Translations under genes and position numbers: made by a program
Notes under the pieces: generated by a model
Database searches by the model: none
What the model saw: only the letters and a program-made list of their open reading frames with translations
Told to the model about the DNA's origin: nothing
Part shown: piece by piece, positions 48,901 to 51,900 of the stretch
Position numbering within the stretch: position 1 is the stretch's first letter
Layout of the letters: each line of letters begins with the position of its first letter
DNA from: Tubulanus polymorphus
Taxonomy: Eukaryota > Animalia > Nemertea
Direction of reading: 5' to 3'
NCBI RefSeq assembly: GCF_964204645.1
Contig: NC_134031.1
Span: 496,001-560,000 of the forward strand
DNA length: 64,000 nt

Positions 48901-51900
48901 CCGGCCGCTGCGGAGAAACAAGGTATCATTTTTGTTTAGCCTAATGTATAGTATCTTCATGTGATGTATCATTCACCTGATGAAGTTTCTATACATGAGT
49001 AGTGAAAGCTTGTGCGTCTAATAAAGTAGTTACCGGTACACCTATATGATACTACCTGCCTCGTTTTATTTAGGCTAACTACAACTTTACTTATATTGTA
49101 GACGTAGTGAATGGATCCAGTCGACCTTTACCGGCTTCTAAATATATCACGCTTCCAAAAGTGAAGAAATCACGTCTTGGATTCGATCAGGTGATTTATA
49201 ACTACCGCATCTTACGACGACATCCAATATTCACGGTGTCGTTTATATTTTATGGTCTGTTTCAGATTTATGTGATTAATTTGAGACGTAGAAATGATCG
49301 CTATGAACGTATGATTAATGTACTCGATGCTATGGGTATAGAAGCTAAATTTATGGACGCCGTTGACGGCCAGTAAGTATTGAATATCCACAGCTCAGAA
49401 CCCTGTTCTACAGCCCGGAACCCAGTGCCACGGCCCAGGACCCTGTGCCACAGCCCGGAACCCAGTGCCACGGCCCAGGACCCTGTTCCACAGCCCAGAA
49501 CCCATGAATCCAGAACCCAGTGCCACAACCGCGGACCCTGTTCTTCAGCCCAGGAATCCACCACCCCAGGATCCACCTCTCCGGGATCCACCACCCCAGG
49601 ATCCACCTCTCGGGGATCCACCACCCCAGGATCCACCTCTCGGGGATCCACCACCCCAGGATCCACCTCTCGGGGATCCACCACCCCAGGATCCACCTCT
49701 CCGGAATCCACCACCCCAGGACATGGATGTATTTATAACTTAAATGAACTTTTTTCACAGATTGTTAAACGTGACCTACATGAAACAAATGGGAATTAAA
49801 CAGTTGCCCGGTTACGCAGATCCATATTGGAAAAGGTTTGTTAAAAATGATGAAAATCACAAATCAAGGAATACCGCGTTAATTATCAAAAACTTAGAAT
49901 CATTTTGAATCTTTATTTACAGAGATTTAACACGCGGTGAAATTGGTTGTTTTCTCAGTCATTACTTTGTATGGCTTGATGTAAGTACATTGTATGATAA
50001 AATAACAGTTTAGATTTCAGGGTTTGACGAATGGTGAAAGCTTTATCTGTTTTGGGGCAGGTCAATTATCAATTTAGGCAGTTTCACTCGGTCTCTACCG
50101 ATTCTGAAATTCTCTTCTGGCGCGTTTGTTTCAACCAGAATATGCTCCACCTATTCCATAATAGTATACTCTGTAAACCTGATAGAAGCGGCCGGTAGAG
50201 AGTTTGTAATCTGTAAACCTGATAGAAGCGACCGGTATAGAGTTTGTAATCTGTAAACCTGATAGAAGCGGCCGGTAGAGAGTTTGTAATCTGTAAACCC
50301 GATAGAAGCGGCCGGTAGAGAGTTTGTAATCTGTAAACCTGATAGAAGCGGCCGGTAGAGAGTTTGTAATCTGTAAACCTGGTAGAAGCGGCCGGTAGAG
50401 AGTTTGTAATCTGTAAACCTGATAGAAGCGGCCGGTAGAGAGTTTGTAATCTGTAAACCTGGTAGAAGCGGCCGGTAGAGAGTTTATAATCCAGAATTGA
50501 TATTCCTTAACCACAATACATTCAATCAAAACCTGTTTAATAGTACCCTTAACACCACTGAATTCTGCTGCTGCTGCTGCTGCTGCTGCTGCTGCTGCTG
50601 CTGCTGCTGCTGCTGCTGCTGCTGCTGCTGCTGCTGCTGCTGCTGCTGCTGCTGCTGCTGCTGCTGCTGCTGCTGCTGCTGCTGCTGCTGCTGCTGCTGC
50701 TGCTGCTGCTGCTGCTGCTGCTGCTGCTGCTGCTGCTGCTGCTGCTGCTGCTGCTGCTGCTGCTGCTGCTGCTGCTGCTGCTGCTGCTGCTGCTGCTGCT
50801 GCTGCTGCTGCTGCTGCTGCTGCTGCTGCTGCTGCTGCTGCTGCTGGTTGCTCAACTATTTGATAAATAAAACATTGCTGAAATATTTCAGGTGATTAAG
50901 AACAATTATAAACGAGTGTTAGTGTTTGAAGATGATATTCGTTTTCAAACGTTTTTTCATCTACGTTTGTTAATGTTGGTTCTCGATGCAAATCGGCACG
51001 TTCCGAACTGGGAACTCGTGTGAGTCGAACTCCCAATATACCTATATATAATACAGGTTTTAAACAACACACCCCGTAGGAACAAACACTGTAGTAATTG
51101 TAAATACATCGTATTGATGATACACTGTAAAGCATGAATTACTTATTCATTAGTTTCGTTAGTTATATATTAGTCATTGTCAACTACAAGTCATCGTGTA
51201 TAACTACTCAAAATCGCTGATATTATGAATTTTAAGCCCCCAGGGTCTCAGTATCACTGTCAAGGCTTTAAGATCATTTTGGATTTAAGATCATTTTGGT
51301 TCTATAGCTAATCTAAGAATTTAAGATCAGTCAGTTTTTCAGTGTTCTACTGAGCTCATGGATCTGGCTGTATGGTCAATACTGGTCTTATAATCAGTAA
51401 GAATTCAAGGGTCCTTTGCTTAGAAGTTTGTTAAAGTTAACTACTGAATAAAATGACAATATCATTTATTCACCGGTTAACTCTTAAACAACTTTAAAGT
51501 ACTGTGATCCTGGAATTATTGTTCTGGAAGTTGACAATGAGTTTTACGTATAATATCTCCTCAGTTTCACCACACGTAGAATTTCACTTGTAGTTCATAT
51601 TATGTATTTTAGTGTGTAGTGAATTAATGATTTCAGGCTGATTGATAGGAGTTTAGTAACGGTTTGTTTATATAGAATTGTAATATGTTTGTTTACTTAC
51701 AGGTTCTAGAGAACAACTACAGTAAAGTATTAGTATTTGAAGATGATATAAGATTTCAGTTATATTTCGAACACCGTCTTCAGTATTTATTTAAAGATCT
51801 TCAAAATCATTCTCCAGATTGGGATTTAGTGTATGTAGCGATGTGTGTTGTGTAAATACGTGCAAAGGGCTGATCTTGGAGGGAGAGAGATGAGAGATTT

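What the first reader, a model, noticed from the sequence alone, without database searches (positions are those of the whole stretch)
50892..51830. Tandemly duplicated, mutually exclusive exons encode two versions of the COLGALT catalytic EDD segment
Seen: two paralogous exons of exactly 128 nt (50892-51019 and 51703-51830), both phase 0 to phase 2, with canonical splice sites and open frames. They keep NNY..VLVFEDDIRFQ..F..RL..L..D......W.LV but differ at roughly half of the residues. Including both or neither would shift the frame. Known: the GT25 EDD motif is the metal/UDP-Gal-binding site of collagen galactosyltransferases, and vertebrates obtain diversity through the paralogues COLGALT1/2/CERCAM. 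Inference: this animal makes two active-site isoforms from one gene by switch-like splicing. I am not aware of this being described for COLGALT.
Basis: partly seen in the sequence, partly recalled or inferred. Interest (0 to 1): 0.82.

Follow-up and report, generated by a model that had tools for sequence, protein, structure and literature searches.

The report
Duplicated catalytic exon in collagen galactosyltransferase gene
The animal's only collagen galactosyltransferase gene holds two old, intact, either/or copies of the exon that builds its metal- and sugar-nucleotide-binding site, but the available RNA shows only the second copy in use, so the two-isoform switch is likely and not yet shown.

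Summary
Exon A (50892-51019) and exon B (51703-51830) are both 128 nt and open, with AG/GT sites. They lie in a 13-exon GT25/COLGALT gene, the only such locus found in the 268-Mb genome. Either exon gives an intact 624-aa frame ending in KYDEL. Both together, or neither, gives a stop within 2-4 codons.

The copies are old. They are 57% identical in DNA, third codon positions are near random, and the flanks cannot be aligned. Both still keep every family-invariant residue, including the Mn/UDP-binding E-D-D. So A was under protein-level selection for most of its history.

RNA evidence covers B only. One sample has contigs with the 51830>53106 junction, and a contig that ends on exon B with no joint to exon A. 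Exon A was seen only unspliced, at intron-level depth.

Eight other animal loci, including Patella vulgata, have a single copy of this exon. The pair therefore looks lineage-specific.

The catalytic residues do not differ between A and B. The differences lie in the following helix, which in A is the most hydrophobic of 122 homologues, and in a surface loop.

Verdict: probable mutually exclusive exon pair (about 0.6), a new member of a known kind. This scan has many notes of such exon pairs elsewhere in this genome.

The parts
45902..46128 (+). Coding exon 1 (start codon, signal-like N-terminus)
   Evidence: Colinear tblastn with COLGALT homologues; the boundary gives an intact frame
46679..46791 (+). 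Coding exon 2
46883..46998 (+). Coding exon 3
47211..47275 (+). Coding exon 4 (65 nt, found by eye between low-complexity intron sequence)
47398..47678 (+). Coding exon 5 (N-terminal GT lobe)
48493..48612 (+). Coding exon 6
49102..49190 (+). Coding exon 7
49266..49372 (+). Coding exon 8 (start of the catalytic lobe; equivalents of human L348, R351, R354, G377)
49761..49835 (+). Coding exon 9
49923..49980 (+). Coding exon 10 (GEIGCFLSH segment; equivalents of human C412, S415); its donor is the common upstream partner of A and B
   Evidence: (PF01755, 26.6 bits, over the cut-off)
49981..50891 (+). Intron upstream of exon A. It holds a 40-nt x 8 tandem repeat (50170-50491) and a perfect (CTG)94 (50565-50846) that ends 45 nt before exon A
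50892..51019 (+). Exon 11A: 128 nt, phase 0 to 2. Encodes the E-D-D segment with an unusually hydrophobic following helix. No spliced RNA seen
51020..51702 (+). Intron between A and B (683 nt, U2-type ends; too long for steric exclusion)
51703..51830 (+). Exon 11B: 128 nt, phase 0 to 2. The copy seen spliced in RNA contigs
51831..53105 (+). Intron between B and exon 12; contains high-copy repeat elements (52712-52949)
53106..53312 (+). Coding exon 12 (equivalents of human K470, Y494-W495, D522-E523)
53787..54075 (+). Coding exon 13 (lid-loop residues, poly-Q run, KYDEL, stop)

Best explanation
An old tandem duplication of the 128-nt E-D-D exon of the single GT25/COLGALT gene produced a pair of mutually exclusive exons. 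Exon B is the default and is spliced into the mRNA of the one sample available. Exon A is a splice-competent alternative that has been kept by selection on its protein sequence. It is probably used at a low level or in a tissue or stage not sampled. Exclusivity is enforced by the reading frame. 128 is not a multiple of 3, so mRNAs with both exons or with neither stop within 2-4 codons, far upstream of the last junctions, and would be removed by nonsense-mediated decay. The two products have the same catalytic residues. They differ in the helix that follows the metal site and packs against the N-terminal lobe, and in a surface loop. Shown: the anatomy, the frame logic, the selection signature and the use of B. 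Inferred: the use of A, the role of NMD and any functional difference.
For: Equal length, phase and canonical splice sites. Either exon gives an intact 624-aa ORF, and both or neither gives early stops. Identity by codon position is 25, 31 and 15 of 42; positions 1+2 versus 3 give Fisher p 0.0012. Fourteen of the 24 identical residues use different codons. dN is 0.43 with dS saturated, and the flanks cannot be aligned. Both copies keep all family-invariant residues and share derived states at positions 19 and 32. A tree with A and B as sisters is not rejected and has a higher likelihood than the free search. The locus is single in the genome. DNA contigs run through A, the intron and B. Spliced RNA contigs show B joined to exon 12, and a contig ending on B with no joint to A. 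A's splice signals fall within the range of the gene's constitutive exons.
Against: No spliced contig contains exon A. The only RNA-sample contig over A (X2, 50943-51146) reads through its donor into the intron, at a depth like other intronic contigs. No A-like fragment turned up in the protein collection or in metagenome contigs. Eight other animal loci have one copy only. A's helix is a hydrophobicity outlier among 122 homologues, which could also mean relaxed constraint. RNA came from one sample of one study, as assembled contigs that drop rare variants.
Confidence: 0.6

Rival explanations
1. Exon A is a former alternative exon, or a duplicate that was once used, and is no longer spliced. 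It would be a recently silenced relic that has not yet picked up a disabling mutation. The gene then makes one product, with exon B.
For: Only B is seen spliced; A is at intron-level depth and unspliced. A is absent from other animals' loci. A's helix composition is an outlier. Relative to the family consensus A has 6 unique changes against 2 in B, which is not significant (p 0.29).
Against: A keeps an open frame, the exact length, both splice sites and all invariant residues, although synonymous sites are saturated. A rough estimate gives under 6% survival without a disabling change after 0.1 neutral substitutions per site (the indel rate is assumed), so any silence must be recent. Contigs cannot show absence of a minor isoform.
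Confidence: 0.3
2. Exon A acts as a regulatory 'poison' exon. Its inclusion together with B creates a premature stop and lowers enzyme output; it does not encode an alternative protein.
For: A plus B gives a stop two codons into B. A lies upstream of the default exon.
Against: A poison exon needs no conserved protein sequence, yet A shows strong codon-position-specific conservation and keeps the catalytic motif. No 51019>51703 joint was reported.
Confidence: 0.06
3. The second copy is an assembly or haplotype duplication artefact.
For: None found.
Against: The copies are only 57% identical in DNA and their flanks are unrelated. Contigs of run X1 run from 50860 to 51321 and from 51297 to 52731, covering A, the intron and B in the assembled order.
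Confidence: 0.02

Closest known systems
Human procollagen galactosyltransferase 1 (COLGALT1/GLT25D1; PDB 8zgc, 9evj, 9u7h)
   Same: Two-lobed GT25 enzyme. The exon pair corresponds to human V423-L464, with E435/D436/D437 binding Mn2+ and UDP (PMC11897130, PMC12987934). The equivalents of R351, R354, C412, S415, K470, Y494-W495, D522-E523, H560-Y561, S569 and T571 are present. The C-terminus carries a KDEL-type signal (KYDEL).
   Different: This is a single gene, where vertebrates have three paralogues. The E-D-D exon is present twice. T562 is R and E572 is D. A poly-Q run precedes the C-terminus. Activity was not tested.
Mutually exclusive exons that arose by tandem exon duplication (a general class known from many animal genes)
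   Same: Adjacent homologous exons of equal length and phase. A length that is not a multiple of three makes double inclusion or double skipping non-productive. The variable part is a defined structural element of the protein.
   Different: Use of the first copy has not been seen. The pair was not found in other sampled animals. I found no report of such a pair for the GT25 family.
Docking-site/selector RNA pairing clusters (Dscam1 exon 6, 14-3-3 zeta type)
   Same: A 14-nt, 93% complementary pair lies just after each donor (51059-51072 and 51843-51856). Pairing there would loop out exon B.
   Different: Duplex energies between the post-A intron and either flank of B are not better than dinucleotide shuffles (z -1.1, -1.2, -0.2). 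No related locus was available to test covariation.

Membership tests
GT25 / COLGALT (procollagen galactosyltransferase) | Match to Pfam PF01755 (Glyco_transf_25) over the curated cut-off | tested here: met
   Exon 49909-49983 scores 26.6 bits against a cut-off of 24 in the six-frame genome search. Single exons B, 8 and A score 23.8, 23.4 and 16.9 bits. The whole protein was not scored because the joined model was left out.
GT25 / COLGALT (procollagen galactosyltransferase) | Colinear similarity to full-length two-lobed COLGALT proteins | tested here: met
   tblastn of P0001, the Haliotis protein P0002 and the Patella protein P0095 hits the exons in order, from about residue 22 to about 583.
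GT25 / COLGALT (procollagen galactosyltransferase) | Metal and UDP site E435-D436-D437 (human numbering) | tested here: met
   Both exon A and exon B carry V-F-E-D-D-I-R-F, aligned to the human motif. The roles of the residues are taken from PMC11897130 and PMC12987934.
GT25 / COLGALT (procollagen galactosyltransferase) | Other catalytic and substrate residues (R351, R354, K470, Y494-W495, D522-E523, H560-Y561, S569, T571) | tested here: met
   All are present in the exon-by-exon alignments to the human chains. T562 is R and E572 is D.
GT25 / COLGALT (procollagen galactosyltransferase) | Galactosyl transfer to collagen hydroxylysine | not testable with these tools
   Needs an enzyme assay.
Mutually exclusive exon pair from tandem duplication | Adjacent homologous exons with the same length and phase and with usable splice sites | tested here: met
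Mutually exclusive exon pair from tandem duplication | Both-in and both-out products are non-productive | tested here: met
   Stops appear 2 codons (both in) and 4 codons (neither) after the junction.
Mutually exclusive exon pair from tandem duplication | Each exon is seen in mature mRNA, never together | tested here: inconclusive
   B is seen spliced to exon 12 and with no joint to A. A was never seen spliced. Only assembled contigs of one sample were available.
Mutually exclusive exon pair from tandem duplication | Both copies are under purifying selection | tested here: met
   The codon-position pattern, synonymous differences at conserved residues, and retention of all invariant residues.
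Mutually exclusive exon pair from tandem duplication | The pair is conserved in other species | tested here: not met
   There is one copy in L009, L010 (Patella vulgata), L011, L012 and L022-L025. Annotated isoforms of five other animals do not differ in this exon. No close relative of this animal could be sampled.
Docking-site/selector RNA pairing MXE cluster | Competing intronic base pairing beyond chance | tested here: inconclusive
   There is one 14-nt complement. Duplex energies fall within the shuffle distribution. Covariation could not be tested.

The most novel reading that the evidence does not exclude
Exon A is a regulated, tissue- or stage-specific alternative. It would give the sole collagen galactosyltransferase of this animal a second form with an unusually hydrophobic helix next to the metal site. 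That could change how the catalytic lobe couples to the N-terminal UDP-Gal-binding lobe, or create a new partner surface. The perfect (CUG)94 tract 45 nt upstream of exon A might serve as a Muscleblind-type silencer that sets the switch.
Probability: 0.15. Interest if true: 0.55.

Novelty: new member of a known kind. Interest (0 to 1): 0.35.

Why it matters
Collagen hydroxylysine galactosylation is needed for basement-membrane and fibrillar collagen maturation. Vertebrates spread this function over three paralogues. If exon A is used, this animal obtains enzyme diversity from one gene by exon choice. It would also give a natural pair of variants in the helix that links the metal site to the N-terminal lobe, a region whose role the recent human structures leave open. 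If exon A is unused, the locus is an ordinary exon duplicate. Either way it is one more case of a class that is common in this genome.

Tried and rejected
- **RNA runs.** No run is on record as RNA. The one possible 2015 RNA run (X4) laid nothing. X2 and X3 turned out to hold spliced contigs, but only for B.
- **A-like exon fragments in the word-indexed protein collection.** No candidate was found.
- **Profile search of 1.84 billion representatives with A+B.** It gave 88 hits. None is closer to A than B is, and no near relative of this animal was present.
- **Metagenome contig scan.** It returned only distant, mostly non-animal GT25 genes.
- **Orthologous loci.** All eight have a single copy, and the taxa of seven are unknown.
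- **Annotated isoforms in Tigriopus, Palaemon, Rhynchophorus, Gryllus and Patella.** None differs in this exon.
- **Intronic pairing 'clamp'.** It is no better than shuffles.
- **Steric or U12/U2 incompatibility as the cause of exclusivity.** Rejected: the A-B intron is 683 nt and all sites are GT-AG, U2-like.
- **An overlapping gene on the minus strand as the reason for A's open frame.** Nothing supports it.
- **Phylogeny on 42 columns.** Unresolved.
- **Left out by rule.** Exons were joined only inside local scripts to check frame continuity.

Full report
**Observation.** The two stretches are as described. Exon A (50892-51019) and exon B (51703-51830) are each 128 nt and open in frame 1. 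Each is preceded by AG and followed by GT. Their translations share 23/42 residues by BLASTP, E 9e-17, or 24/42 when the first Val is counted. Each matches Pfam Glyco_transf_25 around profile positions 81-115. Each also matches human procollagen galactosyltransferase 1 at the E-D-D segment; B scores 33.7 bits and A 26.2.

**Gene model.** I fixed the boundaries exon by exon, using tblastn with full-length homologues and reading the splice sites.
- There are 13 coding exons between 45902 and 54075 on the + strand, and every intron is GT..AG.
- With A or with B the frame is intact for 624 codons, from Met to KYDEL-stop.
- With both exons, the frame stops two codons into B. With neither, it stops after four codons of exon 12.
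- Six-frame searches of the whole 268-Mb assembly find the E-D-D exon only at these two places, and exon 12 only once. This is therefore the animal's only detectable GT25 gene.

Exons were joined only inside local scripts, to check frame continuity.

**The copies are real.** A and B are 57% identical in DNA, and their flanks align nowhere beyond the exon. Contigs of run X1 cover 50860-51321 and 51297-52731 in the assembled order. An assembly or haplotype artefact is excluded.

**Selection.**
- Identity by codon position is 25, 31 and 15 of 42. The third-position value is not distinguishable from the 27.5% expected from base composition (p 0.15). Positions 1+2 are far more alike than position 3 (Fisher p 0.0012).
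- Fourteen of the 24 identical residues use different codons, including five in the V-L-V-F-E-D-D-I-R-F-Q core. The similarity is therefore not recent gene conversion.
- dN is 0.43 while dS is saturated.
- Against 122-132 homologous segments, both copies keep every column that is at least 89% conserved (E13, D14, D15, R17, F18, F22, W40, L42, and D or E at 41). They also share derived states (Q19, D32).
- A tree with A and B as sisters has a higher likelihood than the free search and is not rejected (p-AU 0.60). Forty-two columns resolve little, however.
- B is closer to most outgroups (101 of 132). A is closer to a few, for example Patella and P0070/P0096.
- A rough estimate with an assumed indel rate says a neutral 128-nt exon would survive 0.1 substitutions per site without a disabling change only about 5% of the time.

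Together these show that A was under protein-level constraint until recently at the least.

**RNA.**
- No run is recorded as RNA. However, runs X2 and X3 (one sample, one study) hold spliced contigs.
- In X3, a 435-nt contig joins 51830 to 53106 (GT..AG, depth 91).
- Also in X3, a 1502-nt contig ends exactly on exon B (51703-51830). Its remaining 1374 letters are not listed as laid on the stretch, and no 51019>51703 joint is reported. That length fits the 1251 nt of upstream coding exons plus a short leader.
- Exon A has no coverage in X3.
- In X2, exon A is covered only by a 210-nt contig (50943-51146). That contig reads through the donor into the intron at depth 10, like other intronic contigs (7-14).

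So B is the form in use in that sample. A is not shown to be used. Contigs drop rare variants, so a minor or tissue-specific A form is not excluded. 

**Other animals.** The profile search of representative proteins returned 88 hits. Many are single-exon ORFs with the same boundaries, which shows the exon itself is ancient. None is a close relative of this animal. I fetched eight genomic loci and each holds one copy of the exon:
- Patella vulgata, L010, the whole 30-kb gene.
- L009, L011 and L012.
- L022-L025. In L024 only 658 nt lie upstream of the exon.

Annotated isoforms of Tigriopus, Palaemon, Rhynchophorus, Gryllus and Patella do not differ in this exon. The pair therefore looks lineage-specific, and it has no comparative support.

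**What differs between A and B.**
- By alignment to the human enzyme, exon position i corresponds to residue 422+i.
- E435/D436/D437 bind Mn2+ and the UDP ribose, and mutating them abolishes activity (PMC11897130, PMC12987934). They are identical in A and B, as are R439 and F440.
- Human I442 and R446 contact the N-terminal lobe. Their equivalents are T and L in A, and L and H in B.
- The old 'DXD' at 461-463 lies on the outer surface, far from the site. It reads N-W-E in A and D-W-D in B.
- Over positions 19-35, A is the most hydrophobic of 122 homologues (mean hydropathy 0.54, against a family mean of -0.63 with sd 0.43). It has 3 charged residues against a mean of 6. B is typical.

So the catalytic residues do not vary; the surrounding scaffold does. 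The rest of the gene keeps the equivalents of R351, R354, C412, S415, K470, Y494-W495, D522-E523, H560-Y561, S569 and T571. An active enzyme is therefore expected.

**Mechanism.**
- Exclusivity by frame follows directly from the sequence. Removal of the aberrant mRNAs by nonsense-mediated decay is inferred.
- The A-B intron is 683 nt and all sites are U2-type, so steric or spliceosome incompatibility does not apply.
- A 14-nt complement lies just after each donor. Duplex energies between the post-A intron and either flank of B are within the range of shuffles, so RNA pairing is unsupported.
- A's acceptor has the lowest pyrimidine content of the gene, 9/20, tied with exon 4. Its donor is good.
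- A perfect (CTG)94 ends 45 nt upstream of A. It is the only long pure trinucleotide array in the window. It would be CUG in the pre-mRNA, so a Muscleblind-type influence on A is an untested idea.

**Context.**
- The scan holds about 70 notes with the words for duplicated mutually exclusive exons, at least eight of them in this genome. The class is therefore common here.
- I found no paper that reports such a pair for COLGALT/GLT25D.

**Verdict.** This is a probable mutually exclusive exon pair (0.6), with B as the default and A unverified. It is a new member of a known kind, of moderate interest.

Noticed in passing
window 50565-50846: A perfect (CTG)94 microsatellite (100% matches) lies in the intron 45 nt upstream of exon A. 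It would be CUG in the pre-mRNA. It is the only long pure trinucleotide array in the 64-kb window. It may be unstable, or act as a Muscleblind-type site; neither was tested.
   Followed up: partly
window 50170-50491: A 40-nt unit repeated 8.1 times (96% matches) in the same intron.
   Followed up: no
window 53962-54023: (CAG)20.7 inside the last coding exon encodes a run of about 20 glutamines shortly before the KYDEL C-terminus. The human enzyme has no such run.
   Followed up: no
window 52712-52949 and 51285-51369: Intronic elements with nested inverted repeats (72-nt arms, 92% complementary). Their summed contig depth in the DNA run is in the thousands, against about 28 for the surrounding sequence. 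They look like high-copy MITE-type repeats.
   Followed up: no
runs X2 and X3 laid on window 50860-53400: These runs are not recorded as RNA, yet they hold GT..AG-spliced contigs with exon depth 43-91 and intron depth 7-21. They behave as RNA-seq with much pre-mRNA or DNA, and are usable for other genes of this genome.
   Followed up: partly
proteins P0002 (Haliotis asinina) and P0007/P0095 (Patella vulgata): NCBI names these mollusc orthologues 'probable inactive glycosyltransferase 25 family member 3', although they keep the F-E-D-D-V-R-F metal site. The name may be misleading.
   Followed up: no
window 55976-56224, 58488-58820, 60186-60647, 62121-62483: Downstream open frames look like a glutaredoxin-like protein, two kringle-type domains and a VWD-type domain. 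Several proline/threonine-rich repeat ORFs lie between them.
   Followed up: no
window 49388-49721: The intron between exons 8 and 9 holds 20/40-nt and 15/30-nt tandem repeats that give long open proline-rich frames. These are not part of the coding model.
   Followed up: no
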